64,000 nucleotides of DNA from Octopus bimaculoides (taxonomy: Eukaryota), in NCBI RefSeq assembly GCF_001194135.2, contig NC_068983.1, forward strand, positions 162,472,103-162,536,102. The letters run 5' to 3'. Positions 10,614-63,405 of the stretch are shown here, piece by piece (position 1 is the stretch's first letter; every line of letters starts with the position of its first letter). The notes beneath the pieces were generated by a model. The model saw nothing but the letters and a program-made list of their open reading frames with translations. It did not search any database and was not told where the DNA came from. Position numbers and translations under genes: made by a program.

Positions 10614-12477
10614 CCAAATATATTTAGTATGAAATATTCTTGTCAATATTGTACAAATGCTTGCTTTATAAATACATAATGTTTGGCCTGGTTTGCTTTC
10701 CGTCCTCAGCTTTTGTATTTTTTCCTGCCTTGTATCATGAAAAGTGCGTCTAAGTTTCAGTGACATTCATTGTGGCTTAGTTGTAGGAGCTGCTTTAAAC
10801 AATTTGATAGAAAATTCACAAAAGCGCTTAGTTTGTGCATCAATCTTGTAAAAATAGACACTATATTGTACCATCATTGTTTTATATCTGTTTATCCATG
10901 CTGGCATGGGTTGGATGGAGTTTACATTAGCACACAGCACTTCACCACTTGTTGCAGTCCCTTGTCACCTTAAACACACAGTAAGACAAAGCACCAAGTT
11001 CTGTTATGGTCTATGGCATATTTAAAAATTTTTTTGGCATGTTTTTTCTTTTATGTCCTTCAACCACTTTACAGCATAGACTGGGCATATGTTATCGTGC
11101 CACTAGGCAGGTTCTTTAATAGTAATCTTAAAACATATACCTTTATTATTGTATTAGGAATAGTGGCATTGGAATTTGTTTCGGATTCTTGCAGAACAGT
11201 TTTAGATTATTCGAAGGAACTTTCTAAAAGATACATTTCTATGTCATCAGTTTAAACTTCAGACTCCCTTCTAACCAGTTTACTTTTGTCTAATATGTAT
11301 TATTTTATTTTAGTTATTTATGTTTTGCCGTTTAGTTAGAATTAAATAAGACATTAATATAATATTTTCCTTTTCGCATAGTTATTTAAAATTGAATTCT
11401 AAGAGGTTTTAACCTTGTTTCAGTTGTTTTTGTCGTAGATCTGAAGAAAAATGTGTCATTGGTTGTTTCAGGGATTCTGTTGTTTTGCTTCTTTAAACAG
11501 TATGTCTGATATAATTCTATATTTCTGAGACTAGGAATTTCTCTTATGTGTACTGTTTATATTAGTCAGTGTGGTATCCTCGTCTTCAGTGTTGAACTCG
11601 GTCGATTGAAACTCCGATACAGCAACCGAGTTCAACATAACACCTGAAGAAAGCCGGAGCATACAACAGCCAAAATATAGTGAAAGCTTCAATGAAAGAT
11701 GAAGACATTATACTGACTAATACAAACAGTATATATATATAGTATGTCTGATATTTTTCCAGTGTTCTCTTTTCCTAGTTGAGTCTGTGGGGTAGTTTTG
11801 TTTCTTTGAAGGATTTCTCAGTGTCTTCTCATTTAAATTCCCTCAGCTTCAATAAAAACATTTTTCCCTCCTTTCTTTTTTTACTCCAAGTAAAAACATG
11901 GAAGGCAGTGTCTGTTCAGTCAGTTTATGGAAAGTCTTAGTGTTGATAGCTTCTCCATTTTTTTTTTTTCCCCCCTTTAGGTTGATGGTGCCTATGCTGC
12001 TATAAAATTCCAGCCCAAAGAAACTGATCAGATGGGATCAGCGTCCAAAGAAGATCCTTCAGCTGTGCTGCAAGATTGTCGGCTGTTGCGAAAAGATGAA
12101 TTGCAGGTAGGACAAAATAATCCTTGATTGGATCACTACATTCCACATTGGTTGGAGATTTTAGTTGGATTTGACTGGCTTGATAGAGTGAAATAACAAA
12201 ACCTAACCTATATTTGCCTCACTTTTTCAATCCCTTTCACTCCCTGCTCACTTTTCTATTAGTTACAAATATTAATGTTGATTAGTAAATAACTTTTGAT
12301 GTCTTTGGAAACAAACAAGCCAAAAAAAGTGGGGGTAGGGGTTTCAAATCTAAGCTTAGTTATTTCAAATAATTTTGTTAATCTTCTGCTTGGAATTTGA
12401 AATAATGTTTTTGGGTTTATGCCGAAATAGTTGACAATGCTAATTACAACTATTTAAAAACACATTTCCAAAATTAA

Positions 12478-30100: not shown

Positions 30101-33100
30101 ACTGTTAAATTATTCTATGTTTCTGTGTCTGCATTGTTTTTAGAAAATATAAAATATTAATAGGGAATCATACAAATATTGTTTGTCTTAACAATTTCGT
30201 TTTTCACTTCAATGTCACGTGTATTCTTTGCAGCCCCGATATCCTGTATGAAGAACAGGTGTATTTAGAGAGTCAAGGAGGAACTGCTAGACTTGATAAA
30301 TTCACACACTGTTTATTACTCAAATGCACAGGTGTTGATGTAAGTAAACATTTTCTTTTTGTAGAGCAGCTCACAAAGCAAACCCCAGTTAAAAAAAGAA
30401 AAAAAAAAGGATAATAATGAAAATTTAATTAAACCAATATTTAAATTTCTATTTTTACCTGTCAAGATTTTCCAGGTTGTTGTTTTCGTTTCCTCTGCCC
30501 CTCATCTTGACCCCCCCCCCCAAAAAAAAGAACAATCAATATCACAGTTTTAATCCTTTAGCATTCAAATTATTCTGTCAAATGTAATGCTTATTTATTC
30601 ACATTATTTTGAGCTAATCACGAATTATGTTGTAGCTTTGAGATTTCTATGATGTGATTGTTTACTTTTACAATGACATTGTAGGGTAGGTGTAAGAGGT
30701 CAGATCTGGCTGGTTTAAACATAAAACAGAATATTTCAGTTGGATATGGCCAGTTTAAATGCTAAAGGGTTACATAAAGGAAATATTCTTTTCTACTCTT
30801 GGCACAAGGCCCGAAATTTTTTGCAGGATGGGGCCAGTTGATTAGATCGATGCCAGTATGCAGCTGGTACTTAATTTATCGACCCTGTAAGGCAAAGTCA
30901 ACTTCGGTTGGATTTGAACCCCAGAACGTAAAGACAAATGAAATATCGCTAAGCATTTTGCCTAGCGTGCTAATGTTTCTGCCAGAAATATTGCACTGAC
31001 TGGCCAGGAGAATGGTGAAAAGCCAGCAGTGTGACTAGAAGAGTGTTGAAAACTCAACAACTCCTGACAGTAATCTTGAAATTCCTGTACTGAAATTAAA
31101 AAAGAAAAAAAAGGGTTGGGTTACCTGAACACCCGACTAGTCTAAGATAGGATTAAGTTTTACTGTTGTATTCATATTTCAATATTACTGATTAATGTTT
31201 CTTTCATAAATATTATTATTCTGCTATGATAATGATGTTTAATTAATACTTTAACAAACTTTAGTATTACTGCTATTTAGCCCTAGGAAGCTGCACCGCT
31301 TCCTGTCGGCCATGACACATTTCCTGTGTCCTTATGTTTACGACGGGGAGACAAGTACCCCCACCCAGCCAAGCCTGCATCCAGGGACATGTTTGAGTTT
31401 TTGCTCATCATCAGCCTGACTTGGTGGCAGAAGATGCCTGTCAAGCTCTTGTAAACATATAATAATTCTAGTGAAACACATTCACTGATTACAAAAATTA
31501 GAAATGATACATTTCTAAATCTCTCAGAGAGGCTTGGCTGGGTGGGGGTGCTTGTCTCCCCCTCGTAAACATAAGGACACAGGAAATGTGTCAAGGCCGA
31601 CAGGAAGCGGTCCTGCTTCCTAGGGCTAAATAGCAGTAGTATAATTCCCTTCTTGGGGCTGTCACATTAAGTTGATAGCATACAACTACTTTATCGCATC
31701 ACCACTGCTTAAGTCTCTCTGAGAGATTTAGAAATGTATCATTTCAAACTTTGATATGTTCTGCCCGTAAGGCGGTGAACTGGTACAATCAGTAATATGC
31801 TGGGTAAAATGCTTACTGGCATTTTGTCCAGCTCATTACATTCTGAGATCAAATGTTACCAAGGTTAACTTTGCCTTTCATACATTCGAGGGCCAATAAA
31901 ATAAATCCCAATTGAGCACTGGGGCTGATGTAGTTAACTTTCCCCCTCACTCCAAATTGCTGGCCTTGTGCCAAAATGTGTAGCCAATATTGATGATTGT
32001 TTCCTTAAAAAAGACCTAGATTAAGATAATCTTCTCTTGTACAGATGCTGGACACGTTATTGACAACATTGATCCGAGAAATTCAGAACAATAATGTTGA
32101 AGGTAGAAAAACTGAGGCTAAACTTGTTGCAAGACGATTTCTGCGATCAGTGGCTCGCATCTTTGTAGTTTTGAATGTTGAAATGGTGCCATTATCTGGG
32201 AAAAGAAGAAGGTAACATGGTTTTTTTTTTTATATATGTTTTTGAATTTATATGTCATTGACTGGCTGGCTTCCATGCCGGTGGCAAGTAAAAAGCACCA
32301 TCTGATCGTGGTTGATGTCAGCCCCCTCTAGCCCCTATGCCAGTGGCATGTAAAAAAGCACCCACTACACTCTCAGAGTGGTTGGCGTTAGGAAGGGCAT
32401 CCAGCTGTAGAAACATTGCCAGACCAGATTGGAGCCTGGTGCAGCCTCCTGGCTTCCCAGACCCCAGTCAAACCGTCCAACCCATGCCAGCATGGAAGAC
32501 GGATGTTAAATGATGATGATATATTTGTGTTTGAGAAAGAAAGGATGTTGGCACAATGTACATAATTCTGATTGCTTCAGGAGGCCAACACATTGGTTAG
32601 TAAAGTTTGAACTCTCAATCATGTGGTTAGTAGTTCACAACCTTAACTTCAGTCCCACTGTGTAACACCTCGGGGCAATTATCTTTAACTTTATTTTTGG
32701 CTGGCCAAAGAGCCTTATTAGTAGATTTAGTTGTTGGAAACTGTGTGGAAGCCTATCCTGTGTATATATATATATTTTTTTTACATTTGTGCTTTACATT
32801 TCTCTGAAAATCATTGGGCTCCACACAGTGATGTTGTAGCCATTTCCTTCGTCAAGAAATCCATTGACTTGGGGCCTTCAAAGACGTGTGGAATAAGATA
32901 TCCCTTATGTAAAAAACAGATAAGGGTTAGTGACAGGAAAGGCATCTGGATGTAAATCTGTGCCTCAATAATATATTCATCTAACCCATACTAGCATGGA
33001 AAAATGGATATAAACTCAGTGAATTAACTTGATAGGTTCTTTTGTTCCTTTATAAAAATTTTGTTAATAAAATCGTGTTGGGGTAGGACTTCCTTTCTTC

Positions 33101-33942
33101 GCTGTGTGCCTTCATTTACAAGAAATGTCTGTTGTACATTGTTTGATTTTAATGTTATTTGTATTTTAATGTTATTACAGTTTTATATTTAAGAGACGAG
33201 GAATTATGTACATTATTTACATTTGACAGATATTTGCCCTTATCTTGTTTGTTGTTAACATGTTTCGACTGATATACTCTCCAGCCTTCATCAGGTGTCT
33301 TGGGGAAATTTCGAACCTGGGTTTTCATACCTAAGGTATTTTTCAATGTTATTATTATTATTATTCAGGTCACTGCCTGGAATCGAACTCAAAATCTTGG
33401 GGTTAGTAGCCCGTAGGCATAGGAATGAGAACCCAGGTTCGAAATTTCCCCAAGACACCTGATGAAGGCAGGAGGGTATATCAGCCGAAACGTTGTTAAC
33501 AACAAACAAGATGGGGACAAATATCCGTCAAATGTAAATAATGTTTAATGCTATTGTTTGTATTTTCTGTTGCTATAGCACTGGTACCATCCCTTGTCAA
33601 GCAATTTACAAATGTAAACGTGCATTTCAAGCTCTTATTACAATTGCCATTGAAGAACTATGTGAGATAGCTAACTCATTGATTGCACCTGTCCGTATGG
33701 GTGTGGCTCGCCCAACAGCTCCCTTTAATCAGCTAAGTGCTAGCATTGAAGCAATACAGGTGTGTATTTGTTTTCATAATATTTCTATTTCCTCTGTCAT
33801 TCACTCACACTTTATAATTCAATTTCTATCACTTTTTTTTTATTATTAAATCAGTGTTTAAACAAGGGTACATTCAACCTATTAGTGTTCTAATATAACA
33901 AACAATATTTGCTGTATTTTTTTCTAATATGGAGGGTAAATA

Positions 33943-41500: not shown

Positions 41501-44477
41501 TACACTAAAAAGGCAAAGGGTTGATACTTTTCCGTTCTTTCTTTTGAAATGAGTCCATTATAAAATTTCACAATTTATAAATTTACATTTTTTTCAATGA
41601 ATTTTTCAGCTGCATCTGATGGTAATTCCGCACGCCGGGATTTTCTCAACTATGCATTATCTCTAATGAGGGCTCACAATGATGAACATTCGGACAGCCT
41701 ACCAATTATTGATATTTCTGCCCTGAGACACGTAGCTTATGTCTTTGATGCTTTGATTTACTTCCTCCGAAGTGGGACGGATACCGATACTGAAGTGCTG
41801 AGAGATGGAATCTCCGTTCATTCTTGGCAAGACCATGACCTAAACGACAACGAGGAACATGACGATGATCCGATGAGTAGTGTGGCCTTAGATGCTGAAA
41901 GTGTTGATGGTGACAGTGATGCTGGTGGACGTACGGGACGAAAACATCCATTCTTTCAACGTTCCGATTCCACCATTTTCCTCGGATGTCCACCACCCGA
42001 TCCGTTTAGTATTCCTCTCATTGAAGCTCTCCCACTTGCTGATCTTCCACATTTGCTTCAACCCAATTCACGACGAGAAGATTTATTTGGAATTGCCCGC
42101 CAAGCCATCCACCCAACAGACGCGAGTGAGTCGAGTGCAGATGTCAGTGGTGGAACGCCTGCTAGTTACAGTGCCAACGTCTCAGGGAGTATATCGACCA
42201 ATTCTTTTGAAAAAAAAATGCCTGTTCACCTGTCATTGTCCCTACGTTTACAAGATACACAGAACACAGCTTCATCTACTGTGGAAGCTTCAACATCGAC
42301 ATCTGATAGGCAGGAAATAGTAAGTACCAGCGTCATTGTAAAACCAACAGCTCAAACAGGGGCCACATCAAATCCACCTGTCACAACTGCTACTTTCTCT
42401 ACAATATCATCCACTTTAAGTACTTCAACACCATCTTCTGGGCTAGAAACGACTGTTGTTTCTAGCACTAGAGCTGCTGCCACATTGATGACTGCTCCTG
42501 GACCTACAGCTATGGAGACATCAGAAATAGATTCTCATTCTCAACACACTCTGCTCCAGTCTCTGGCTAACAGTGCCACTTCGTTATGTGTGTCTTCATC
42601 TCAGGCTGCTGTGCAACTGCCACCCCCGCCCCCGCCGCCGCCACCTCCTCAGCAGCAGCAGCCTCCCAGCTCTGTTTCTCTATCTACACAACAAGCCAGC
42701 GTGATAGTACATGCCAGCTCTGCCCAGAGCAGCTGCAACGCCCCCACTGTTATGTCGACAGGACCCGTCTTTGCCGTCAGTAGCAGTGTTGCTAATAACA
42801 ATAGCAGTAACAACAACCGTGCTATAGTGGTGATGCCGTCAGACTCTAATTCTAATGAAATGGTAACTGCCCTAGCTGCAGCACCACAAACCACAACTCT
42901 TCAACCTGGAAGTACCTCTCCTTTGGCTGTTTCTACATCGACTCCTGTCAACCAAAATAATCCTACTTCTTCGGCCGTTAATGCCCTAGCTCCAGTTTCT
43001 GATGTTTCCACCCAACAACCGAGACCAGGGCTTTCTGTGACAACCCCTTCTGATTCATCAGTTGCTATTGCTGACAGGTTAGGACACCTTTCTTTCTTCA
43101 ATTCATTTCAAATTTATTTAAAATTGTTGATTCGTTTCAGTAAAAATAATCAAACAAATTAAAATATTCAATTGTGAACTTGATATGAAATATATTGTGA
43201 AGGTACATGGCCTTGGGGTTAGGCCGTCTCATTCATGATTGCTAGATCATGAGTTCAATTCCCAGACCTTGTGATGTGTGTTGTGTTGTGTTCTCGAGCA
43301 AATCACTTCATTTCACATTGTTCCATCTGAAAGCTAAAACAATACAAAGTGCATTGTGATGAGCGATGTGTAACAACATCTGATAGTCTGGTTGGTCATG
43401 TGATGAAATATATTGATTTTCTTGATTTCACATTTTATTACAGTTATTGCATTTATGTATCTGAAAGAGGTTTTAAATCTGTCTAACCTCGTCTGCCTGG
43501 CTGACATAGGGTCAAACAATTTAGTAGTTTCTGTCAATGGGCATAATTACTCGTACAATATGCAAATGTTCAATTTCCCATTTCATCCAAATATTGCGAA
43601 ATGGATATTAAATAGTAAAATATACAGGAACAGGTTGTGTGGCAAGAAGCTTGCTTGCATGGCACCTTGAGCAAGTATCTTCTACCACAGCCTTTGGGTT
43701 TCTCTGGCCAGATGCTCTTCCTAACATCAACCACTTTACAGATTATATGCTGGGTGCTTTTTATGTGGTACCAGCATGAGTCAGGTTACCAAGTAACTGG
43801 ATTGAGTTAGGTTGTAATAGAGAGGGAGGTGGTTTTATGAGGGGCTAAAGTGTGATAGAGAGACAGGAATGAGTGTATTGTCTGAGAGGAGATACATGGC
43901 TGGGTGTGTAGCTAATATATATCATCATCCTTTTAACATCCACTTTTTCGTGCTTGCATGGGTCAGGCAGAGTTTATCGAGGTAGATTTTCTATGGCTGG
44001 ATACCTTTCCTGTCACAAACCCTGACCCGTTTGCAAGCAATGTAAGGCTAGACCTTTTTACACATATTAGAAATGAATGATAGTTATTTACAACAACTAT
44101 GTGCTGTCAAAACAAAGTGACACTAACATACAAACACACAAACACACGCGTGGTCTGAAAGCACCTACAAATGAAGTTGTCTATATTGAGACCTATGGGT
44201 CAAAAGAAAGTTGGTGGAACTTATAAATTAGAACAGCCACTAAGTTAAAACACAACTGGCCAGATATTGTTGTGTGGGACCACTAGGAAAAGATAATTCT
44301 GCTGTGGAAATCAGCTGCCCTCTGGGCACCAGTGTGGTCTAAAGAATACAAGAGAAAGAGGACATCTATGAACCATTGATAAAAAGTTTGCATCTCTAGT
44401 ATCCAGGATGCACTTTCAGCTTCATACCCGTTATTTCTTTGCTACAAAGTAGTTGAGCGGTCAAAATTTACTCTTAA

Positions 44478-46554: not shown

Positions 46555-46946
46555 NNNNNNNNNNNNNNNNNNNNNNNNNNNNNNNNNNNNNNNNNNNNNN
46601 NNNNNNNNNNNNNNNNNNNNNNNNNNNNNNNNNNNNNNNNNNNNNNNNNNNNNNNNNNNNNNNNNNNNNNNNNNNNNNNNNNNNNNNNNNNNNNNNNNNN
46701 NNNNNNNNNNNNNNNNNNNNNNNNNNNNNNNNNNNNNNNNNNNNNNNNNNNNNNNNNNNAACTTCTGGCTTTTCTGCAGATTGGAAAACTGATTCCATTG
46801 CTGGTAGATGATTAAAAGATTAAACCTAAATCTAAGAACTGATCCAATCCATCAGATGGTTCTATCTGTTGAATTTCCATTCGGTCTTTGGTCAATTTTA
46901 ATTTCTGCTAGAAGATATCTGCTAAGCTGCTGTGAGACTGACCTGT

Positions 46947-46986
<40 letters not shown>

Positions 46987-48732
46987 TTCTTGCTTTAAGA
47001 TTTTTTATTTCTTTTTTTTAGTTAGTTTTTACAGCTGGAAATGTGCAGTGAAATTAATTTTCCTATATTTTGTCTCTTTTTAAGACCACAGAATGCCATT
47101 GGTCAACAAGTATCACATGACATCTTGTTAGGGAGATGGCGATTATGCTTGGACCTATTTGGTAGAGTATTTTGTGATGATGTTGGTGCGGAACCTGGAT
47201 CTGTGATACATGAATTGGGGGGCTTTCCTGTTAAAGAAAGCCGGTTCAGAAGAGAAATGGAGAAAATCAGAAATTCACAACAGAGAGACTTATCATTAGA
47301 GGTAAAATCACGTTTTAATTACTCTGAATTGTTAATTATTTAAATCAACCCCAAATGTTCCTTTGTTAATGAAGTTTATTAGAATTTTATTATTTGTACC
47401 TGATTAAATACATTTGGTAATGTTAACAGGAAAGACAGAACTCAAAATTAGTGTGTGCATGCATATATGTGTTTGTTTGTGTGTGTGTGTGTGTGTGTGT
47501 GTGGTAAAAGCAATAGTGACTCAAGGGCCAAGAATTTCATGTGTTAGTAGTCAAAAGTGCTAATGCATGAAGCTCAGAGCCCTTGGGTCACTTTGTTGAT
47601 TCTACTAAATATTAATAAAAAACATATAACTGATTAAATATATGTCATCATCCATCATTTTGAATCCAGATCTACCTCAATGCCATAGCAACTGCCCTCA
47701 TACCATCTTGCGACCATTTAGGCGTCCTCCCTTCTTAAGCCAACCTTCCCAATCTTCTCCTCCACATGTTCCTCAGTCTACCTCGCTTTCACTGTCCATT
47801 TACCTCAAGCACAAGCATCCTTCTCAAAACATGCTCCTCATCACTCCTCAACACATGCCCATACCACCATACTCCATTTAACCTTGCCAGCCATTCCACC
47901 AATTCCTCTAACCCCAGCATCCCCATAAAATCCTCAGTCCTCCTCTTATCAAACAGCTTCACCCCACACATTTCTCTCTCTGTCCTCCTCACAATTGCTC
48001 TCTCTCTATATATATATCTCTCTCTCTCTCTCTCTCCCTCCTTCAATCACCATGTCTCACTCCCATACAGCATAGCAGCTCTCACGCAACTCTTATAGAC
48101 CCTTCCTTTCTTCATCATATGTAATTTNNNNNNNNNNNNNNNNNNNNNNNNNNNNNNNNNNNNNNNNNNNNNNNNNNNNNNNNNNNNNNNNNNNNNNNNN
48201 NNNNNNNNNNNNNNNNNNNNNNNNNNNNNNNNNNNNNNNNNNNNNNNNNNNNNNNNNNNNNNNNNNNNNNNNNNNNNNNNNNNNNNNNNNNNNNNNNNNN
48301 NNNNNNNNNNNNNNNNNNNNNNNNNNNNNNNNNNNNNNNNNNNNNNNNNNNNNNNNNNNNNNNNNNNNNNNNNNNNNNNNNNNCTGGGCCACCGCTTGCT
48401 GTCCACAAAGTGAAAGTGACCTTCAAAGATGAGCCTGGAGAAGGAAGTGGAGTTGCTAGAAGTTTTTACACAGCTATGGCAAATGTAAGCAGTTTTTCTA
48501 ATTAACCTTTTCATTGAAAATGCAAGACTTTTAACATTCAGCTCCTAATTTGTACTTTTTCTTTATTTATTATTGGAACAATCTGGAAAAAGTTGCTGTA
48601 ATCATGGCCTTCTCAGATTCTTTCAGAACACACACACACACACACACACACACAGTGCTGCATTGACCATTACATAAATTTTTGTAAACATCATAAATTG
48701 TTTCTTTTTACTTGGAAATATCAGCGCGCATG

Positions 48733-48764
<32 letters not shown>

Positions 48765-51700
48765 TTACAGTTCCACATTTTGCATTATCCTTCTTTGTGT
48801 TTTTCCTTCTTGCTTTTCTCATGTTTACTCGTAGTCCAGCTTCCTGGTTCTTAAATAGATCCAATGCAAGAACTGAGACTGAAAGACTGCATGGAGATAC
48901 ATTGCCTGTCATATAAATCTGCCAATTTAATGTATCCTAAAAGCATGAAACTATTTATGGCTCTTTTGTAATCACGTATATGAAATGATGTATGTGTGTA
49001 TATTAGTTATATTTTAGTTATTTTCTCTTTCTTAGGCTGTATTAACATCTGAAAAATTACCATCGCTTGAAGGTGTTTTAGTTGGTGGAAGTAAAAGCTT
49101 GCAGTATAGTAAGTACATTATTCCCTCTTGTGTCATATTTACTATTTACCATTAATTTTTTGTCTCCCCATCATTAAAAAATTGCCACATATAATAATCC
49201 AGTGCAATTGTTATGTATTTTAATTGTTATTAGTTTACTGAAAATGGACCAAACATTGTTTCTTTTCCAGATTTGATTCAAAGACTTCGGTCCAGAGAGA
49301 GAGAACGGGAACGGATGAGGTCAGCTCTTCAAAGACGCAGTCGAGAAGCCAGGCGGACACTTTCTTATGATGCTCCACCTTTCTATATGCCTTCTGATAG
49401 TGCAGCCGTTGGGGCTGGTGGTGGTGGTGGTGGTGGAGGAGGTGGCAGTGGTGGTGGTGGTGGTGGTGGCAGCGGCGGCAGTGGAAGCAGTAGTGCTGCA
49501 GCAGCTGCTGCTGGAGGAGCAGGAGGAGCGGTAACAGGAGGTGGAGCTGGTGGCAGTACAGCTGGAGGTGGAGGTAGTGGTGGTGGTGGTGGTGGTAGTG
49601 GTGGTGGTGGAAGCAGCAGCAGTGGCGGTGGCGGTGGTGGCGGCGGCAGTAACAGTAACAATAATAATGAACAGCAGTCTTCTGAGAATGATAGTTCCTC
49701 CAACTACCGGCGCCAGCTAGGAGAAAGACTCTATCCAAAAGTTAGAGACTTACAACCAGTAAGGAAAAACAAAATTTTTGTTTCTTTCTTTCAAAATCTT
49801 AATAGAATTTAATGAAATAAAAGCTTAATTGTAGGCTGTTAACCCTTTAGCATTTAAATGGCTCATATCCATATCCAGCTCAAATATTCTCCTTGTTTTA
49901 TGTTCAAACCAGCCAGATCTGGTGTCTCAAGTCTATCCTATAATCATCATCATCGTTTAACGTCTGCTTTCCATGCTTGCATGGGTTGGACGGTTTGACT
50001 GAGGACTGGCAGGCCAGGAAACTGCACCAGGCCCCAATCTGATCTGGCAGAGTTTCTACAGCTGGATGCCCTTCCTAACGCCAACCACTCTGAGAGTGTA
50101 GTGGGTGCTTTTATGTGCCACCGGCACGAAGTCCAGTCAGGCGGTACTGGCAATGGCCATGTTTGGATGGTGCTTTTTACGTTCCACTGGTGCAGGGAGC
50201 TAGTGAGGTGACACTGGCAACGAACCACGCATGAATGGTGCTTATTGCGTGCCACCAGCATGAGAGCCAGTCAGGTCGCACTGGCATCAGCCACAACTAT
50301 TTCTATTTTGATTTACTTGACTCAATAGGTCTCCTCAAGCATGGCTTGTCGTCCAATGATTCAAAGGTACTTGTTAAATGGGCTGGTTATGTGACACTGT
50401 TATAGGCTATAGCTGTGATCTCGCTTTACTTGCTGAGTCCTCTCAATCACAGCATATCTCCAGATTCAAAAATATGCACTCGGATCCACAAAATTTTTAA
50501 GCTTCAATATAATCTAAATGGTAAGTAGTTAATCTAGGTTGAGAGGAGGAAATACCCTTAGGGTATCCTCTCACTGTTATAGTAGCAATTCTAGAGTTGA
50601 GATAGCAATACTATTACTACTACTACTGTGTATTGTTGATGGAGACAAAACCTGAACAACTTTTTTTACTTCAACCTGATTTCTAAATGGATTAATAGAA
50701 CTGAAGTAAAATCAGACTTTTGGTGGCCCTCTGGAATATTCAGGGCCACAAAACTTTCCTGACACATTGCAAAATGTTTGAAACTAAAATATATTTTAAA
50801 AGTTTAAATTTTGGAGAATTTGTTTGCTTAATCTCTTTTGGCATTGGCATCCTTTTAGACCAATTTCTTTGTCCTTTAAAATAATGTACTACTTGAAGAT
50901 TTTGTCTCAAATCCAATGTTTTGAACTCCTCAGATGGTTTTTCTATTTTTTTATTTTTTTATTTTTTTTTACAGTCAATGGCAGCAAAAATAACAGGAAT
51001 GTTATTGGAACTGTCACCAGCGCAGCTCCTCCTTCTGTTAGCCTCTGAAGAATCTCTAAGACAGCGTGTTGATGAAGCAATGGAAATTATTCTTTCACAC
51101 AGCAAGTAAGTTCTGTATAAAAGTAAAAATCTCATCTAGTCCCTCTTTCTCAGTATTACTTTTTGTCTTCTTTATTTCAGTTTCAACTAAAAAAAAAAAA
51201 AGGATTTGAGTCAATAGTTTTCCTTTGGCAAGCCAAGTAAGACCGTAGTTGTGGCCTATAACAGTGTCGCATAACTGGCCTATTTAAGAGTACCCTTCAA
51301 TCATTGGGCAACATGGTGTGCTTGAGAAGACCTGTTGAGTCAGGTGACATCATTGTCGTGGCCAATGCCAGTACTGCCTGACTGGCACCCGTGCTGGGGG
51401 CATGGAAAAAGCACCATTCAAGTGTGGTCATTGCCAGTGCTCCCATGCCGGTGGCATGTCAAAAAACACCATTCTGGCTACTGTGCCAGTGGCACGTAAA
51501 AAGCACCATTCGAGTGTGGTCATTGCCAGTGCTGCTTGACTGGTTCCCATGCCGGTGGCACGTAAAAAGTACCCACTATGCTTTTGGAGTGGTTGGCATT
51601 AGGAAGGGCATCCAGCTGTAGAAACCTTGCCAGATCAGATTGGAGCCTGGTGCAGCCCCCTGGCTCGCCAGTCCTCAGTCAAACCGTCCAACTCATGCCA

Positions 51701-54519: not shown

Positions 54520-57500
54520 AGGGTGGTGAAACTGTTGAGTTGGTTGCTGGAGGTGCTGATATAGAAGTCAACGCTCAGAATGTTCATGATTATGTTAGAA
54601 GATATGCTGAATATCGTATGGTTAAAGTTGCTGAGAAAGCATTAAAGGTATTTCATTTAACTGTTTGGCATTCAGATTTCTCCGCCAAATGTAATGCTTA
54701 TTTATTCACATTGTTTTGGAATTAATCATACGGTACCTTCTAGCTTTGAGATTTCAACAATGTAATTATTTCTTTTAGGCTCCTGTGCGGGTGGCACATA
54801 AAATACACCATTTGAGCATGGCCGTTGCCAGTACCGCCAGGATGGACCTCATGCCGGTGGCATGCAAAAGCACCCACTACACTCACGGAGTGGTTGGCAT
54901 TAGGAAGGGCATCCAGCTGTAGAAACTCTGCCAGATCAGATTGGTGCCTGGTGTAGCCAACTGGTTTCACCAGTCCTCAGTCAAATTGTCCAACCCATGC
55001 TAGCATGGAAAGCGGACGTTAAACGATGATGATGATGATGTAATTATTTATTTTTAGAATGATGTTGTAAAGTAGGTCTGAGAGTCCTGATCTGCTCAGT
55101 TTGAATATAAAACAGGTGGAATATTTGGGCTGGATATGGCTGGAGTTGAATACTAAAGGGTTAAACATCATCGTCGTTGATTAACATCCACTTTCCATGC
55201 TGGCATGGGTTGGACGGTTTGACTGAGGACTGGCAAGCCAGAAGGCTGCACCAGGCTCCAATCTGACCTGGCAAAGTTTCTACAGCTGGATGCCCTTCCT
55301 AACGCCAACTACTCCAAGAGTGTAGTGGGTGCTTTTACGTGCCACTGGCATGAGGGCCAGTCAGGCGACACTGGCATCAACTACACTTGAATGGTGCTTT
55401 TTATGTGCCACCGGCACGGGAGCCAGTCACTATTAAGTAAAACATTCTTTTAAGATATTTTAAGCCTCAATGATCAAATATTTAAGGCATTCACAACTAA
55501 ACATTTCCTGGGGGTTGTTTTAAGAATAATTGTAATTGCTTGAAGTCATCAAAGTATGGCCATACTTTATCAGTTTTTAACGAATAAACAATGTGGATTA
55601 ACATGCGTCTCATTTAAGAAGAAAGACAAATTAAAATTGCATTGTTTTATAAAAATGTGTCAAAAGTTACCAATAATTGTCAAATACTTTGGTTCATTCA
55701 ATATAAGAAATGGTCATCTGATCAATGAAGATAGAACTGAAATAAAACAAAGTTTAACAAAGATACATTCATTAATTAATCCAAATTATTGAAGATGATG
55801 CGAGAGTCTGAGCTTTAAGCTGGAATAAATCTTGGCTTATTTGAATAATTTTATTATTGTTATGGAATATAATTCCATGTGTAATTATAAATGAAAATTG
55901 AAATCTTTTTTTTTTTTTTTTTTTTTTCTTTGTAGCATTTAAAATTGGGTGTATTTGATGTAATTCCTGCCAACTCATTGGATGGCTTAACTGCTGAAGA
56001 CTTCAGGTTGTTATTAAATGGAGTAGGAGATATCAATGTACAAACCCTGATTAGCTACACCTCCTTTAATGATGAAAGTGGTAAAGTTTACTTCCTTCAA
56101 ATATTTCCTTTTCCTCTTACCATTTTTGCCAGTCTTTATTGGTCTATTAGCCTTGAGTTCATGAGTCATGTTTAAATAAACCGGGAACCAATGTTTTCCA
56201 TGATTCCATACCAAAGACACCTCTTTAGATGTATTTTATTGGTGGGGGAAGTCTCTCTTTTAGTACAATGTTAAGTCACTTGCAAGTGAAACCTTTTTGT
56301 TTTATTCGACGTCATCATTTAACGTCTGTTGTCCATGGTTGGGCGGTTTGACTAGAGCTGGTAAGCTGAGAGGCTGCACCTGACTCCAGTCTGCTTTGGC
56401 ATGGTTTCTACAGCTGGATGGCCTTCCTAATGCCAACCACTCCAAGAGTGTAATGGGTGCTCTTACATGCCACCGGCACGGATGCCAGTTATGTGATACT
56501 CACATTGGTCACATTGCCTCCATCACTACATTGAAGATAGATGTACAATATCTGGGTAGTGTAGGGAATGACTGACCAGTATGAATAAACATCTTGTGCC
56601 ATTTGTAATGATGTGTAATTTAATTGGCAATGGAAAAAATGTTTGTGGTTAAGTATTGTAGAAAGGATTATTTTGTATATTGATCATCCTTTCATAAAGT
56701 AAGGTGATGTTTGGAATGAAGTAATATAGTAGGAACGTACTGATTTAAAAGAAATATTTGATATATTCACACACGCTACCCTAGTGATTTAACAGAATCA
56801 ATCTTTTACCTAAAGCAGTAAATTGAAATTTCACATAATTTTAAAATTTGAATAAGTTTGAAAATAAAGTTATTAAATCACAATTTAGGTTAGTTAAAAT
56901 ATGTTTGTCACATATTTCAACTGCTAAAGGCAAATACACTGCAGTTACCGTGGAGAAAAAAAGTCTCTCTTAAGGTAAAAAGGTGTGGAAACATCTGTTT
57001 CAGTGTCGCCCTCTCTCGGGAATCTGATGAAAATTTCTGCAGAATTTTTCCTTTAGCAGTTGGAAAATGTGACAAACATATTTCAACTCACCTAAGTTGT
57101 AATAATATGTAAACACTGCTTAGCGCATTTACTCCGATAAAGTTATTAAAATTTAAATATCAAGTTTATCATTATTTTATAATTAGGAATATTCTGATTC
57201 TCATTAGAATCCCTTCATTGGAGGAAAATATTTAGATTCAGTACAAATGTTAGAGAATGAAGCGATGGAGGGAGAAAAATAGTCTGTGAACATTGTACAG
57301 TGGAAAATAAGTTTACCTGATGGGGGAACATGTTGTTAGTGAAATAGTTACAGGATTTAAGTTGATATTTAGACACTTTTGATAACAGTTCATGATGATT
57401 GTGATGGTAGGGGACTTTCATAAGAACTTTTCCAAAGATTGTCTTCATCCTTTCATTACCATAACCGCATATCTTAGCGTTTGTAAATGTCTTTTTTGTT

Positions 57501-59384: not shown

Positions 59385-61558
59385 AAGCTTTGTTTTAGCT
59401 AAAAAGGTGGGGTACACAAACACAAACCTATCAGCCTTTCTAAATATATATTAAAAAAAAACCAAAACAAATAAAAAAAAATGGTACATTACATTAGTGG
59501 AAGCCATTNNNNNNNNNNNNNNNNNNNNNNNNNNNNNNNNNNNNNNNNNNNNNNNNNNNNNNNNNNNNNNNNNNNNNNNNNNNNNNNNNNNNNNNNNNNN
59601 NNNNNNNNNNNNNNNNNNNNNNNNNNNNNNNNNNNNNNNNNNNNNNNNNNNNNNNNNNNNNNNNNNNNNNNNNNNNNNNNNNNNNNNNNNNNNNNNNNNN
59701 NNNNNNNNNNNNNNNNNNNNNNNNNNNNNNNNNNNNNNNNNNNNNNNNNNNNNNNNNNNNNNNNNNNNNNNNNNNNGTTTCTTTTTCAGTTATAAAAAAA
59801 GAAAGAAAAAAAGAATTCCTTCATATTGACAGCCTTGATTTCCTGTAGAATCTATTCTTAAATATTTCGTTCTATCAAGAATGATGTATTTATGTTTTCG
59901 GGGTCCAAAGAAAAAAAAAAAAAAAAATTATTTTAGTATTTTAATAATCATCACTTGCAATAACTTGCTTGAGGTGTTGCCTGTTTGGCCTTTAGCTTAC
60001 TAATGGATTGGTTGTGCTTTGTTAATTTCCCAGTGTTAATTGTAATTTGTATATAAAAGAATCTCCTTACTACAAGAGAAAATGGATGGCTCTACACAAA
60101 TTCCAACAAAAGTGAATTGGAAGCAAATTTCTTCCTTTAAAACATACTTTTTTGGTATCTGCTAACTTCCCAAATTTTTCTATATTTTAATTATTACTGA
60201 TTTATTTTAATGTGTGTGTGTGTGTGTAATTATATATATACACACATAAGTTATGTTGAAGGACATGCATGATGGTTAACAAGACAAAAAACAGGCATGG
60301 GTTTGCCTATTTCATCATTTAAAAAAAAAATTCAGTTATGATTTTGGTGCTGGAAAATGTTTATCATTTTCCAGGGTCTCCAAACAGAACAAAACCCAGT
60401 CTTAGGACAGGGACAGAAGTGTGGTGTGAAAACAAGAAGGTATTAAAGATGGTGGGGGGTTGGTTTGAGAGAAGGAGGAGGCTAGCATAAAGGGGGGAAT
60501 TAGATTTTTGAAGAAATACAACCTGAACATAGAGAAATATATTTGTATGTGGTTAGTGTAAAAAGCTCATGGAAGTGAGAAGATATAAGATAGAGCAAGT
60601 GCAACAAATACAATAAAAATATACGTAAGAGTAAGAAACAACTCCTTAAACAACAGTGAAAGAAGGTCATTGCACTGACAATGTAAAGGGGAAAAATTGG
60701 ACCTGGATAAAAAAACCCTAGTTTCTCAGCTAAATTTTTAACTTGGGTTATTTAATGGTTTTGACAGTGCAAAAATTTGGTATTGCCCATCTGGAAAGTG
60801 TATGGATATACACACAAGCATTTGAAAAAAAAAAACAAAAAAAAAATCTTGTAAACTGTGAAGCATTATTTAATTTATTTACATTTGATTAATAATGTAA
60901 CACAAGATATGCCTCTTTTATAAATACTTCAAATAATGAACATCTTGTAATTTCTTTTTATGATCTAATGTTAGTTTCTACAGGAACTCCAAATCCTGTC
61001 ACAGGTTCCTCCTATAGCTTTGTTCCCTCCCACTTTTTATATGCAATTCATGTAAATACCTCTTCCTTAAACCTTCCCNNNNNNNNNNNNNNNNNNNNNN
61101 NNNNNNNNNNNNNNNNNNNNNNNNNNNNNNNNNNNNNNNNNNNNNNNNNNNNNNNNNNNNNNNNNNNNNNNNNNNNNNNNNNNNNNNNNNNNNNNNNNNN
61201 NNNNNNNNNNNNNNNNNNNNNNNNNNNNNNNNNNNNNNNNNNNNNNNNNNNNNNNNNNNNNNNNNNNNNNNNNNNNNNNNNNNNNNNNNNNNNNNNNNNN
61301 NNNNNNNNNNNNNNNNNNNNNNNNNNNNNNNNNNNNNNNNNNNNNNNNNNNNNGTGTTTAAAACGACGACAGTTTCCTAGAATAATTTTAATCTTCAGGC
61401 CAGTGCTGCACTCAATGCAGTTTGGCTTTGACACATAATTTATATTTAAGAAAAATTTGTAAAGTATTTTTTGTAGGAGAGTGTTGTAGTTCGCTTGAAG
61501 CATTGTATATTGTTTGTAAAGAATAAAAAGCTTTGAATGATACAACAGTGCACTATAA

Positions 61559-61779
61559 TACAAAAAATGGACTATATACCTGTTGTAATTTAGTTATCCA
61601 TAGTATGAAAATATTTCAGAATAAAATTCCTTCTTCAGATATTCTTAGATGGAGTTGCTGCTATAATCCGTTTTCCAAGCAGTGGCTCTATCTAAGAATA
61701 TCTGAAGGAATTTTATTCCAAAATATTACCAGCCTATGGATGAATAAATTACGACAGGTATATATAGCCCATTGTTGTA
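61559..61779. mobile_element. Foldback element with a hammerhead motif in each arm
   Basis: Inverted arms 61559-61650 and 61690-61779 around a loop of about 40 nt. Confidence 0.7.
61604..61641 (-). ncRNA. Hammerhead motif downstream of the PDCD2L stop, sense to PDCD2L
   Basis: UAU-CUGAAGA-A-GGAAU(UUU)AUUCU-GAAA-UAUUU-UC^AUA. A decayed inverted copy lies at 61702-61727. Confidence 0.6.
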
Positions 61780-61809
61780 CCATTCAAAACTTTATAGTAT
61801 TTTTTTGTG

Positions 61810-63405
61810 TTACATAGATTGTTCATCTTGTACAAAACATTCTTCTTCTCTCCATTTGTCCTTCTGGTCATCCCAACAACTCAGTGAACAACTGTAGCAA
61901 ATAATGGTTCCAAACTCTACAGCACAATCTGAAATGTACGAAATGCATTGAATTCTATGGTCCATGGTGAAACAAGTAACTAAGTAATGCCAGGTTTTAA
62001 GATTATGGGCAACTCTAACTTACCATTGCTACCAAGAAAATTGAGGTCTTTGACGAGAGCTGGCATTAACTGGAATTCAAACTGTCGGTCTGCTCCACAA
62101 TAACTACAGCAGCCTGGATCAGGAGCATTCTTTGTTAATGTGACTGGTTTCCCACCCAGCTCATACCTGTTCAACATAATGAAAGATGGAATACATACTT
62201 AAACTGCTATATACACACACACACAGTATAAAACTATTATGTCATATGATGCAATTAAGAAATAGGTTTACCTTACACACTGTTCTGGCCATTTTGATAA
62301 AGTTTTATAAAATTTGTACACAGATTTATCTCCATGTTGCACATTAGTCTTTTCATAGGTTTCTGTACACCCAGCGGAAGTTTTCCCTCCTCTGTGGAAA
62401 GAAAGACTTAAATTACTGCTTTGTTAAGCTGATAGATGAAATTATGTGTGTATGCACACAGACAGACAGACACACGTGATCACACAGTTGCAAAATCTGG
62501 GGGAGAGAATAGTTCTCAAATTCCAAAGATAGACTAAAATATGGTATTTCTGTTGAAGCTGAAGAAACTTCAAACATGATTACTCAGAATTTCCTCTAAC
62601 CGTTGTGAGTATTCAGAACTCAAGTCTGAGCAGTTACATGAAACTGAGTAAGTTTTTGAAGTCTTTTTTCAGCTTGAGTAAAATTATATATATCTATAGA
62701 TAAAACCCGGCAACTAATGTGAGATTGCAGCCACGCATGTCCGGCCCTGTTAAGAATACCCCTGATGCATCGGGCGATACAATATGCTTGAGAAGACCTG
62801 TTGAGTTAAGTAAAACCAATATCGTAACTATGGCCATTGCTACTTGACTGGCTCCCATTCTGGTGGCATGTAAAAAAGCACCATCCTAAGGTGGCTGATG
62901 CCAGTACCCACTGACTGGCCCCTCTGCTGGTGGCGCGTAAAAGCACTGTCTGAACGTGATCGATGCCAGGCCCGACTGGCTGGCTCCTGTGCCAGTGGCA
63001 TGTAAAAAGCACCCACTACACTCTCGGAGTCGTTGGTGTTAGGAAGAGGATCCAGCTGTAGAAACATTGCCAGATCCGATTGGAGCCTGGTGCAGCCGCT
63101 GGTTCTCCAGACCTGAGTCAAACCGCCCAACCCATGCCAGCATGGAAAATGGACGTTAAACGATAATACAAAAACAAACGCAGAAACGTTAGGTGTTATC
63201 AACTCACTGAGCAGCACTGATCATTTCCTCATAAGCTTTTCCCTCTCTTCCTTTATAGTTTTCTAGAAGCTGTTGGATGTGCTCAGAGTGACTGCTTTCT
63301 TCCGATTCTTCGTATACATTTAAATAATAAGGCTTGAGGCACGGTTCATCTTTGTAGTTTAGTTGATGGTTTTGGTGGGAAGTTGAGGTCGTTTGTGGAA
63401 AGCAT
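61810..63405 (-). CDS. PDCD2L: Programmed cell death protein 2-like, last four exons (PDCD2_C domain)
   Basis: Exons 63405-63208, 62391-62272, 62166-62024, 61928-61810 (TAA), all AG/GT and in phase. Translation ...CLKPYYLNVYEE...QQLLENYKGREG...ETYEKTNVQHGDKSVYKFYKTLSKWPEQCVRYELGGKP...CSYCGADRQFEFQLMPALV...VEFGTIICYSCSLSCW...EEECFVQDEQSM* follows the PDCD2L C-terminal motifs. Confidence 0.9.

What the first reader, a model, noticed from the sequence alone, without database searches (positions are those of the whole stretch)
61559..61779. Hammerhead foldback just downstream of the PDCD2L stop, also supplying a candidate poly(A) signal
Seen: the element starts about 30 nt after the PDCD2L stop. 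The arm sense to PDCD2L has an intact core (predicted UC^ cut between 61607 and 61606). The two arms show complementary CpG decay, ATTCTGAAA versus ATTCCAAAA, which reconstructs an ancestral perfect stem II GGAAU/AUUCC followed by GAAA. The proximal arm contains AATAAA on the minus strand at 61717-61712. Inference: transcripts ending at that signal avoid the ribozyme, while read-through transcripts include a 90-bp hairpin and a potential self-cleavage site, a possible 3'-end switch.
Basis: partly seen in the sequence, partly recalled or inferred. Interest (0 to 1): 0.72.

Follow-up and report, generated by a model that had tools for sequence, protein, structure and literature searches.

The report
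Decayed hammerhead-bearing foldback in a 3' UTR
Right after the stop codon of a PDCD2L-type gene sits a 285-bp inverted-repeat relic, most likely two truncated Penelope-like retroelement ends joined head to head, one of which still spells a minimal hammerhead ribozyme motif that almost certainly no longer cuts, so this is an ordinary transposon fossil rather than a ribozyme-based 3'-end switch.

Summary
It starts 8 nt after the TAA stop (61812-61810) of a PDCD2_C-domain gene.

The minus-strand motif UAU-CUGAAGA-A-GGAAU/AUUCU-GAAA-UAUUU-UC^AUA (61641-61604) is not a chance string. A Penelope-type minimal-hammerhead descriptor hits only this site and one arm of an independent hammerhead foldback family in the same window. 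It gives 0.007 hits per shuffled window and no hits with 191 permuted-core decoys.

The motif has an unpaired base after A9. Its G10.1 pairs with C11.1 in the CpG-restored ancestor. It is one of two copies on opposite strands. These are published traits of Penelope-like-element minimal hammerheads.

It is nevertheless a decayed relic:
- the other arm's core is broken;
- no Rfam hammerhead model matches;
- helix I is 3 A-U pairs and helix III is 1 pair;
- the hammerhead fold costs +39 kcal/mol against the -126 kcal/mol hairpin in a read-through RNA;
- published single minimal hammerheads show no detectable cleavage.

The AATAAA is real but occurs at chance frequency. A downstream ATTAAA with a GU-rich element is at least as good a poly(A) signal. 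The ribozyme 3'-end switch is not supported.

The parts
61810..61928 (-). Last coding exon of the PDCD2_C-domain (PDCD2L-like) gene. Acceptor AG at 61930-61929; stop TAA at 61812-61810.
   Evidence: Translation ...DCAVEFGTIICYSCSLSCWDDQKDKWREEECFVQDEQSM*. Pfam PDCD2_C E = 9.6e-20 for the two last exons joined. Splice sites were read from the sequence.
61518..61802 (.). Whole foldback (imperfect palindrome), 285 bp, 31% GC, single copy in the window.
   Evidence: Inverted repeats I1-I3. Arm alignment: 104 of 125 aligned positions identical, 13 transitions, 8 transversions, 20 gap columns. RNA MFE -125.7 (minus strand) and -127.9 (plus strand) kcal/mol; z = -16.6. No other copy found by blastn or nhmmer.
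61678..61802 (+). Right arm, proximal to the stop codon. Read on the plus strand it is the outward-reading paralogue of the left arm.
61663..61677 (.). 15-nt central loop or spacer (ATAATCCGTTTTCCA).
61518..61662 (-). Left arm, distal in the mRNA. Read on the minus strand it carries the intact hammerhead-type motif. It contains a 17-nt insertion or tandem duplication at 61556-61572.
61604..61641 (-). Minimal type-I hammerhead-like motif. Helix I UAU (61641-61639) pairs with AUA (61606-61604). Core CUGAAGA 61638-61632. Unpaired A 61631. Helix II GGAAU (61630-61626), loop UUU, AUUCU (61622-61618). GAAA 61617-61614. Loop 3 UAUUU 61613-61609. U16.1-C17 at 61608-61607, with the predicted cut between 61607 and 61606.
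   Evidence: Sequence. Descriptor hits. Shuffles and decoys. The window-family covariance model aligns to exactly 61641-61607 but scores only 9.1 bits, E = 4.8.
61702..61730 (+). Decayed paralogous motif in the other arm: CTGAAG-GAATTTTATTCC-AAAA-TATTA-CC. It lacks 3 nt in the core, G12 has become A through CpG decay, and U16.1 has become C.
   Evidence: Arm alignment
61712..61717 (-). AATAAA hexamer, 92 nt after the stop codon. It is the antisense of the loop and 3' strand (UUUAUU) of the decayed helix II.
   Evidence: It is the only AATAAA in the 459 nt between the stop and the assembly gap; about 1 is expected from composition.
61360..61392 (-). Alternative, possibly ancestral, poly(A) signal. 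ATTAAA at 61392-61387 is followed 16 nt later by the GU-rich UGUCGUCGUUUU (61371-61360). It lies 417 nt after the stop, or about 130 nt if the foldback is removed.
   Evidence: for the hexamer. The GU-rich element was read from the sequence. Its use as a signal is inferred.
61513..61517 (.). Possible target-site duplication TTTGT, left copy. The right copy is at 61804-61808.
   Evidence: Read from the sequence. Both flanks are T-rich, so this is weak evidence.
61804..61808 (.). Possible target-site duplication TTTGT, right copy.
   Evidence: Read from the sequence; weak evidence.

Best explanation
The 285-bp foldback is a transposon fossil. Most likely it is two 5'-truncated 3'-terminal pieces of a Penelope-like retroelement, or of a non-autonomous element that uses its machinery. 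They inserted head to head a few bases after the PDCD2L stop codon.

Each piece read outward from the centre and carried a minimal type-I hammerhead (min-HHR) about 70-90 nt from its outer end. Such ribozymes serve the retroelement's own RNA processing and work only when two same-strand copies dimerise.

Since insertion the two arms have drifted apart neutrally to 83% identity. In the right arm the core was destroyed: 3 nt are missing, and the C11.1pG12 CpG decayed to CA. In the left arm the core letters survived, with the same CpG decayed to TG, giving a G10.1-U11.1 wobble.

Today the motif is not an active ribozyme. Any mRNA that reads through the element folds it into a long A/U-rich double-stranded hairpin. 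Such a hairpin would be a typical substrate for ADAR hyper-editing and other dsRNA-binding factors. The AATAAA in the proximal arm is a by-product of the antisense helix-II loop. It may or may not be used as a poly(A) signal.

Shown: the anatomy, the non-randomness of the motif, its decay and the energetics. Inferred: the Penelope-like origin, the insertion event, ADAR targeting and poly(A) site choice.
For: 1. Anatomy.

2. The motif is non-random. A min-HHR descriptor allows an optional unpaired base after A9 and requires G at 10.1, helix II of at least 4 bp, GAAA, 2-8 nt, UH, and helix I of at least 3 bp.
- It hits only 16420(+) and 61638(-) in 64 kb.
- Shuffles give 0.007 hits per window.
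- None of 191 permuted-core decoys hits the real sequence.
- The result is stable across 24 settings.

3. Published hallmarks of Penelope-like-element min-HHRs (PMC4209133) are partly present here. [quoted passage not shown]
- The unpaired A is present.
- G10.1-C11.1 appears in the ancestor inferred independently from the TG/CA arm difference.
- Helix I is 3 bp and helix III is 1 bp.
- Two copies sit on opposite strands, both reading outward, with equivalent cleavage positions about 126 bp apart.

4. The same window holds a clear min-HHR foldback family with the same architecture, at 16165-16512 and 33210-33544, plus a fragment at 11641-11682.
- Its motif is CUGAUGA-A-GGCUGG..UCAGCC-GAAA-CG-UU.
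- The core is 12/12 invariant, against 67/112 for the rest.
- Such elements are therefore common in this genome.

5. Inverted 5'-truncated copies are a typical insertion form of Penelope-like elements (PMC8557442).

6. Signs of neutral decay:
- G:U wobbles are 7 on the plus RNA and 6 on the minus RNA.
- Both strands fold equally well.
- The motif region is as diverged between arms as the rest.

7. Signs of inactivity: plus the published lack of cleavage by single min-HHRs.

8. Repeat-derived hairpins are the main ADAR substrates across metazoans, octopus included (PMC9989829).
Against: - No second copy of this particular element is in the window, so no family consensus or covariation could be obtained.
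- There is no detectable sequence homology to the 16165/33210 family: Smith-Waterman p = 0.2-0.9 and no nhmmer hit. That family's covariance model gives only 9.1 bits, E = 4.8.
- No Rfam hammerhead hit.
- Helix II is 5 bp and A/U-rich, against 6-8 bp reported for Penelope-type min-HHRs.
- Loop 3 (UAUUU) is not palindromic. In the alternative loop-free register, AUAU is palindromic but helix I then fails.
- The 3-nt indel in the core leaves it open whether the ancestor had CUGAAGA at all.
- None of the six long ORFs scanned matched a reverse-transcriptase or GIY-YIG family.
- The termini are blurred and the 5-bp TSD is weak, so a DNA-transposon MITE or a local inverted duplication cannot be excluded.
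Confidence: 0.55

Rival explanations
1. The foldback is an unrelated inverted repeat: a MITE-type DNA transposon, or a local inverted duplication of the 3' UTR. The hammerhead-like string in one arm is a coincidence of A/T-rich, locally palindromic sequence.
For: - The window holds at least 8 foldbacks from several unrelated families, some with crisp transposon-like termini, such as 27544-27676 flanked by TA.
- Only one arm has the core.
- No hammerhead covariance model matches.
- A possible 5-bp TSD (TTTGT) flanks the element.
- GGAATTTTATTCC is a simple local palindrome.
- A descriptor hit rate of 0.007-0.045 per 64 kb still means hundreds to thousands of chance hits in a gigabase genome (inference).
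Against: - None of 191 permuted-core decoys gives a hit on the real sequence, while the true core gives two.
- The motif shows traits that descriptors do not ask for. These are the unpaired base after A9, a CpG-restored G10.1-C11.1 pair, outward orientation, and the dual opposite-strand arrangement.
- Genuine min-HHR foldbacks occur twice in the same window.
Confidence: 0.3
2. The left-arm hammerhead is active in read-through PDCD2L transcripts. Together with the AATAAA in the proximal arm it forms a 3'-end switch: short isoforms escape, and long isoforms are self-cleaved.
For: - The core letters are intact on the mRNA-sense strand.
- The AATAAA is upstream of the motif, so the logic is coherent.
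- Hammerheads in 3' UTRs that lower expression are known from rodent CLEC2 genes (my own knowledge: Martick et al. 2008).
Against: - The hammerhead fold is +4 to +8 kcal/mol for the isolated arm.
- In the read-through RNA it costs +39 kcal/mol, an equilibrium fraction of about 1e-28.
- The complementary arm is transcribed first.
- The motif has a G10.1-U11.1 wobble, a 3-bp A-U helix I and a 1-bp helix III.
- No Rfam match.
- Single min-HHRs show no detectable cleavage in vitro.
- There is no sign of constraint on the motif or of strand-specific RNA selection.
- The AATAAA is at chance frequency, and a downstream ATTAAA with a GU-rich element exists.
Confidence: 0.03
3. Whatever its origin, the hairpin has been co-opted as a structured RNA element of the PDCD2L 3' UTR. 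It could be an ADAR-edited or nuclear-retention hairpin, or a source of siRNA or miRNA. Choice between the inner AATAAA and the outer ATTAAA would decide whether the mRNA carries it.
For: - The hairpin is very stable on the mRNA strand (-125.7 kcal/mol).
- Rfam's only hits are long-hairpin miRNA precursor families.
- Repeat-derived hairpins are prime ADAR targets in octopus and other animals.
- Two candidate poly(A) signals bracket the distal arm.
Against: - The miRNA hits are far below gathering scores (39 against 140 bits) and reflect hairpin shape only.
- G:U wobble counts show no preference for the mRNA strand (6 against 7), and the plus strand folds slightly better. Neutral DNA-level decay explains this as well.
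- No expression data or orthologues are available.
Confidence: 0.1

Closest known systems
Minimal type-I hammerheads (min-HHRs) of Penelope-like elements, including the 'dual motifs on opposite strands' of truncated copies (Cervera & de la Pena 2014, PMC4209133)
   Same: - Type-I topology and a CUGANGA...GAAA core.
- An unpaired nucleotide between A9 and 10.1.
- G at 10.1, pairing with C11.1 in the CpG-restored ancestor.
- A very short helix I and an almost absent helix III.
- Two copies close together on opposite strands.
- Dispersed occurrence away from any ORF.
- Expected inactivity as a single motif.
   Different: - Helix II is 5 bp and A/U-rich rather than 6-8 bp.
- Loop 3 is not palindromic.
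- One of the two copies is broken.
- No family consensus or covariation, and no link to a Penelope-like ORF or terminal repeat, could be shown.
- The paper's main text contains no word beginning 'mollus', and the hammerhead + octopus/cephalopod searches found no such report.
The hammerhead foldback family in the same window (16165-16512, 33210-33544, fragment 11641-11682)
   Same: - A foldback of about 285-350 bp.
- The hammerhead core in each arm reads from the centre outward.
- The same CUGANGA-A-GG...CC-GAAA layout.
- The same CpG decay at C11.1pG12 in old copies.
   Different: - No detectable sequence homology.
- The core sits 32 nt from the centre, against 82 nt.
- That family has G/C-rich helix II, ACGU at positions 15.1-16.1, and all four cores intact.
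Metazoan non-LTR retrozymes (Cervera & de la Pena 2020, PMC7229834)
   Same: Type-I hammerhead in a short, low-GC, non-coding repeat of a few hundred bp, possibly mobilised by Penelope-like machinery (bioRxiv 10.64898/2026.07.22.740005, abstract).
   Different: Retrozymes are head-to-tail tandem repeats whose same-strand hammerheads release circular RNAs. Here there is no tandem repeat, and the two copies are inverted.
Discontinuous hammerhead in rodent CLEC2 3' UTRs (Martick et al. 2008; my own knowledge, not checked here)
   Same: A hammerhead inside an mRNA 3' UTR that could couple 3'-end choice to transcript fate.
   Different: The CLEC2 ribozyme has stable helices and tertiary contacts, is conserved among orthologues and cleaves efficiently. 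None of this is shown here, and the energetics argue against it.
Inverted-repeat transposon pairs in 3' UTRs, such as inverted Alu pairs, as ADAR substrates (general principle supported by PMC9989829)
   Same: Two inverted copies of a retroelement in a 3' UTR form a long intramolecular dsRNA.
   Different: Here the two copies abut, with a 15-nt loop, and probably arose in one insertion event. Editing has not been examined.

Membership tests
Hammerhead ribozyme (Rfam clan CL00010) | Conserved core C3-U4-G5-A6-N7-G8-A9 / G12-A13-A14 / A15.1-U16.1 / H17 | tested here: met
   The left arm on the minus strand has every core letter. The paralogous right arm does not: 3 nt are missing, G12 is A and U16.1 is C.
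Hammerhead ribozyme (Rfam clan CL00010) | Three helices around the core that are stable enough for the active fold to be populated | tested here: not met
   Helix I is 3 A-U pairs; helix II is 5 pairs including G-U; helix III is 1 pair. The hammerhead-compatible structure is +4 to +8 kcal/mol against an MFE of -7.3 for the isolated arm. It costs +39 kcal/mol in the full hairpin context.
Hammerhead ribozyme (Rfam clan CL00010) | Match to a curated hammerhead covariance model (Hammerhead_1, _3, _II, HH9, HH10) | tested here: not met
   No hammerhead hit at E<=10 in 61350-62000 or in the 96-nt arm alone. Positive control: 28869-28945 gives HH9 at 23.6 bits, E = 5.7e-4. The clear min-HHR family at 16380-16520 is also missed, so these models are insensitive to minimal variants.
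Hammerhead ribozyme (Rfam clan CL00010) | Site-specific self-cleavage | not testable with these tools
   Needs in vitro transcription or cleavage-end sequencing.
Penelope-like-element minimal hammerhead (min-HHR) | Unpaired nucleotide between A9 and 10.1 | tested here: met
   A at 61631 lies between CUGAAGA and GGAAU. The hallmark is listed in PMC4209133.
Penelope-like-element minimal hammerhead (min-HHR) | Conserved G10.1-C11.1 pair | tested here: inconclusive
   The pair is G-U today. The TG (left arm) against CA (right arm) difference implies an ancestral CpG, giving G10.1-C11.1 followed by G12. This is an inference about the ancestor, not the present sequence.
Penelope-like-element minimal hammerhead (min-HHR) | [quoted passage not shown] | tested here: inconclusive
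   In the register with helix I, loop 3 is UAUUU and is not palindromic. In the loop-free register, A15.1-U-A-U16.1 (AUAU) is palindromic in both arms, but no helix I then forms. Read from the sequence.
Penelope-like-element minimal hammerhead (min-HHR) | Long helix II (6-8 bp) and helix I of 2-5 bp | tested here: inconclusive
   Helix II is 5 bp, slightly short. Helix I is 3 bp, within range.
Penelope-like-element minimal hammerhead (min-HHR) | Belongs to a genomic consensus family with covariation; located in the terminal repeat of a Penelope-like element or a truncated copy; dual motifs 100-700 bp apart on opposite strands | tested here: inconclusive
   The dual opposite-strand arrangement is present, with equivalent cleavage positions about 126 bp apart. 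No further copy is in the window. No reverse-transcriptase or GIY-YIG family was found in the six long ORFs scanned.
Metazoan non-LTR retrozyme | Head-to-tail tandem repeats of 170-400 nt, each with a same-strand type-I hammerhead | tested here: not met
   No tandem or direct repeat. The core-like string 240 nt downstream (61398-61373) has no significant similarity to the arm (p = 0.45).
MITE (non-autonomous DNA transposon) | Terminal inverted repeats with defined termini, a target-site duplication of superfamily-specific length, and many copies | tested here: inconclusive
   The inverted repeats span the whole element, but complementarity fades at the ends. A possible TTTGT duplication lies in T-rich flanks. 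The element is single-copy in the window; genome copy number is not testable.
microRNA precursor | Score above the gathering threshold of a curated family; a 60-80 nt hairpin with strand-specific conservation | tested here: not met
   The best hits (MIR2606 39 bits against 139.7; MIR4208 34 against 140; MIR8562 31 against 211) reflect only long-hairpin shape. There is no G:U strand bias.

The most novel reading that the evidence does not exclude
The relic acts as a transposon-born dsRNA toggle in the PDCD2L 3' UTR. Polyadenylation at the element's own AATAAA (61717-61712) would give a hairpin-free mRNA. Use of the outer ATTAAA (61392-61387) would give an mRNA carrying a hairpin of about 120 base pairs that is hyper-edited, retained or diced. 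More broadly, head-to-head Penelope-type hammerhead foldbacks may be an abundant and so far undescribed source of such hairpins in octopus genes. Residual ribozyme activity would be an optional extra, and I rate it at about 3%.
Probability: 0.12. Interest if true: 0.5.

Novelty: new member of a known kind. Interest (0 to 1): 0.3.

Why it matters
If the reading is right, the locus is one more example of Penelope-type minimal hammerheads scattered as truncated, inverted copies. The class has been known since 2014. I found no report of it in cephalopods: papers holding 'hammerhead ribozyme' and 'octopus' were only incidental.

It shows that a ribozyme-looking core next to a gene can be statistically real and still be a dead transposon part. 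This is useful for calibrating scans of this genome.

The practical consequence for the gene is not catalysis. It is that read-through PDCD2L mRNAs would carry a long double-stranded hairpin, in an animal group noted for heavy RNA editing. A transposon-supplied AATAAA could let some transcripts avoid that hairpin.

Tried and rejected
1. Rfam at gathering thresholds on the whole window gave nothing. At E<=10 on the whole window, the region and the single arm, there was no hammerhead hit at this locus.

2. Homology of the arms to the clear hammerhead foldback family at 16165/33210:
- MAFFT did not align the cores.
- Smith-Waterman against shuffles gave p = 0.2-0.9, and nhmmer found nothing.
- A similarity I saw by eye (TCCAYC..CTGAnGAAGG, GGTAAC..ACAGG) is therefore not significant and was dropped.

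3. A covariance model built from that family's four motifs gives 9.1 bits, E = 4.8 at 61641-61607, which is within the noise.

4. Other copies in the window: blastn and nhmmer found only a weak match at 21581-21654 (E = 0.18-0.32), where C3 is replaced. Treated as chance.

5. A type-III or discontinuous hammerhead using the inner and outer hairpin as helices I and III was rejected. The palindrome puts G, not H, at position 17 and adds a fourth helix (read from the sequence).

6. A same-strand partner for a dimeric ribozyme: the CUGAAGA...GAAA string at 61398-61373 passes only relaxed descriptors and has no significant similarity (p = 0.45).

7. tRNA-like or SINE origin: no tRNA-like sequence.

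8. Assembly artefact was rejected, because the arms are only 83% identical, with indels.

9. Orthologues and family copies from public data:
- The protein search with the C-terminal 92 aa found nothing.
- An 18-mer shared by both arms gave 26 metagenome contigs, all chance matches of 18-28 nt.
- The supplement of the Naiad paper is not held.
- No octopod genome was reachable, so the orthologous-locus test could not be run.

10. A Penelope-like ORF in the window: six long ORFs gave no reverse-transcriptase or GIY-YIG match.
Full report
**What is there**

The window is draft eukaryotic DNA: 36.5% GC, CpG observed/expected 0.37, nine N gaps.

On the minus strand, two exons (62177..62024 and 61928..61810) encode the C-terminal part of a PDCD2_C-domain protein (Pfam PF04194, E = 1e-19; ORFs). 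They end in TAA at 61812-61810. I could not verify PDCD2L as opposed to PDCD2, or the species, because no cephalopod data were reachable.

- left arm 61518-61662
- loop 61663-61677
- right arm 61678-61802

The arms share 104 of 125 aligned positions (83%). They differ by 13 transitions, 8 transversions, a 17-nt insertion or duplication in the left arm (61556-61572) and a 3-nt indel.

As RNA, either strand folds into one long hairpin: -125.7 kcal/mol for the mRNA strand (z = -16.6 against shuffles) and -127.9 for the other strand. The 17% arm divergence rules out an assembly artefact.

All of them check out. On the mRNA strand the distal arm reads UAU-CUGAAGA-A-GGAAU-UUU-AUUCU-GAAA-UAUUU-UC^AUA (61641-61604), with the predicted cut between 61607 and 61606.

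The other arm, read on the plus strand, has CUGAAG-GAAUUUUAUUCC-AAAA-UAUUA-CC. TG in one arm against CA in the other is what two independent deaminations of one CpG produce. A second TG/CA pair occurs near the loop. The inferred ancestor ...AUUCCGAAA gives a perfect GGAAU/AUUCC helix II and a GAAA box in both arms.

AATAAA on the mRNA strand is at 61717-61712. It is simply the antisense of the helix-II loop region of the decayed copy.

**Is the hammerhead resemblance chance?**

I expected so, but the tests say no.
- I then read the paper that defined the minimal hammerheads of Penelope-like elements (PMC4209133). Its hallmarks are type-I topology, a nucleotide between A9 and 10.1, a conserved G10.1-C11.1 pair, a short helix I, a helix III reduced to nothing or one pair with palindromic 15.2-16.2 or loop 3, and action as dimers.
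- A descriptor built on those hallmarks again hits exactly two places: 16420(+) and 61638(-). Shuffles give 0.007 per window.
- I kept the real sequence and permuted the core boxes instead (192 combinations). Only the true hammerhead core gives any hit.
- This holds across 24 parameter settings, with decoy means between 0 and 0.26.

**Context in the same window**

The other hit belongs to a family of two foldbacks (16165-16512 and 33210-33544) plus a decayed fragment (11641-11682).
- All four arms read CUGAUGA-A-GGCUGG...UCAGCC-GAAA-CG-UU^GUG from the centre outward.
- The 12 core letters are invariant in all four arms, while only 67 of 112 other columns are.
- This is the published min-HHR pattern, including ACGU at 15.1-16.1.
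- It matches the paper's remark that dual min-HHRs are found about 100-700 bp apart on opposite strands in truncated elements.
- Penelope-like insertions typically carry an inverted 5'-truncated copy next to the main copy (PMC8557442).

The locus under study has the same architecture: a foldback with two outward-reading copies, an unpaired A after A9, and GG...CC flanking helix II. C11.1pG12 is a built-in CpG of such hammerheads. The old fragment at 11641-11682 shows the same CCGAAA-to-CCAAAA decay as the right arm here.

**What argues for caution**

- The arms have no detectable homology to that family, and the family's covariance model scores this motif within the noise (9.1 bits, E = 4.8).
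- No other copy exists in the window.
- Rfam's hammerhead models do not match. However, they also miss the clear family, so they are insensitive to minimal variants. They do pick up a separate HH9-like site at 28869-28945.
- Helix II is short and A/U-rich, and loop 3 is not palindromic.
- The 3-nt indel leaves open whether the ancestor spelled CUGAAGA.

I therefore give about two chances in three that the motif descends from a real min-HHR. About one in three remains for a look-alike inside a MITE or a local inverted duplication. The window has at least eight foldbacks from several families.

**Does it work as a ribozyme or a 3'-end switch?**

The evidence is against it.
- The hammerhead-compatible structure of the isolated arm has positive free energy (+4 to +8 kcal/mol) against an MFE of -7.3. 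The arm folds no better than shuffles.
- In a read-through RNA, C3, U4, G12-A15.1 and C17 are at least 99% paired with the other arm. G5-A9 and U16.1 are partly open. Forcing the hammerhead costs 39 kcal/mol.
- The complementary arm is transcribed first, so it can capture the core co-transcriptionally (inference).
- The published min-HHRs gave no detectable cleavage as single motifs and only weak cleavage as same-strand dimers. Here the partner is on the other strand and is broken.
- Divergence between arms is as high inside the motif as outside it. G:U wobbles are split 7 to 6 between the strands, so there is no sign of selection on the mRNA-strand structure.

**Polyadenylation**

The AATAAA is the only canonical hexamer in the 459 nt before the assembly gap, but one is the number expected from base composition.

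An ATTAAA lies at 61392-61387 and is followed by UGUCGUCGUUUU. It would sit about 130 nt after the stop if the foldback were removed, so it is a plausible original signal (inference).

Whether either site is used cannot be decided from sequence. If the outer one is used, the mRNA carries a long hairpin of the kind that ADAR enzymes hyper-edit in animals, including octopus (PMC9989829).

**Verdict**

The locus is best read as a decayed, head-to-head pair of truncated Penelope-type retroelement ends. One of them still shows the letters of a minimal hammerhead. This makes it a new member of a known kind and of modest interest. The decisive tests, which I could not run, are a genome-wide family consensus, orthologous empty sites, 3'-end mapping and in vitro cleavage.

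Noticed in passing
window 16165-16512 and 33210-33544; fragment 11641-11682: Two foldbacks of about 340 bp belong to one family (72-75% identical). All four arms carry an outward-reading CUGAUGA-A-GGCUGG..UCAGCC-GAAA-CG-UU motif, with the core 12/12 invariant against 67/112 elsewhere. They fit the listed core hallmarks of Penelope-type minimal hammerheads, although helix I is only 3 bp, and they fit the 'dual motifs on opposite strands' pattern. A third, decayed copy scores 24 bits with the family model. Rfam models miss them.
   Followed up: partly
window 28869-28945 (+): A separate type-I hammerhead-like sequence, CUGAUGA-ACCC..GGGU-GAAA-UCAUGUGC-UC. It matches Rfam Hammerhead_HH9 at 23.6 bits (gathering 52); E = 5.7e-4 in a local search. 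It is not in a tandem or inverted repeat, and its fold is no better than shuffles (z = -0.8).
   Followed up: partly
window 6329-6743, 27544-27676, 31265-31641, 54778-55424, 56877-57103: Five further foldback elements. 6329 and 54778 share an internal segment (86-93% identity over about 160 bp). 27544-27676 has 97% identical arms starting ACAGGGTGTCC/TCCAGGGTGTCC; read with its inverted repeats starting at CAGGGTG, it is flanked by TA on both sides, like a Tc1/mariner-type MITE. Foldbacks occur about once per 8 kb in this window.
   Followed up: partly
window 61398-61373 (-): A second CUGAAGA...GAAA string on the mRNA strand, 240 nt downstream of the first and next to the N gap. It passes only relaxed hammerhead descriptors and has no significant similarity to the foldback arm (p = 0.45).
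   Followed up: yes
window 21581-21654 (+): Weak similarity to the hammerhead region of the foldback arm (GTGAAGAAAGAAATTTTGGCAGAAAC; nhmmer E = 0.32, blastn E = 0.18). Probably chance, but it is the only candidate relative in the window.
   Followed up: partly
window 41597-43162 (+): An uninterrupted 521-codon ORF with no Pfam match, which is unusual for this intron-rich, A/T-rich sequence.
   Followed up: no
window 46834-48863: Five weak, similar-scoring SCARNA7-like Rfam matches on both strands (17-22 bits) between assembly gaps, which suggests a local repeat family.
   Followed up: no
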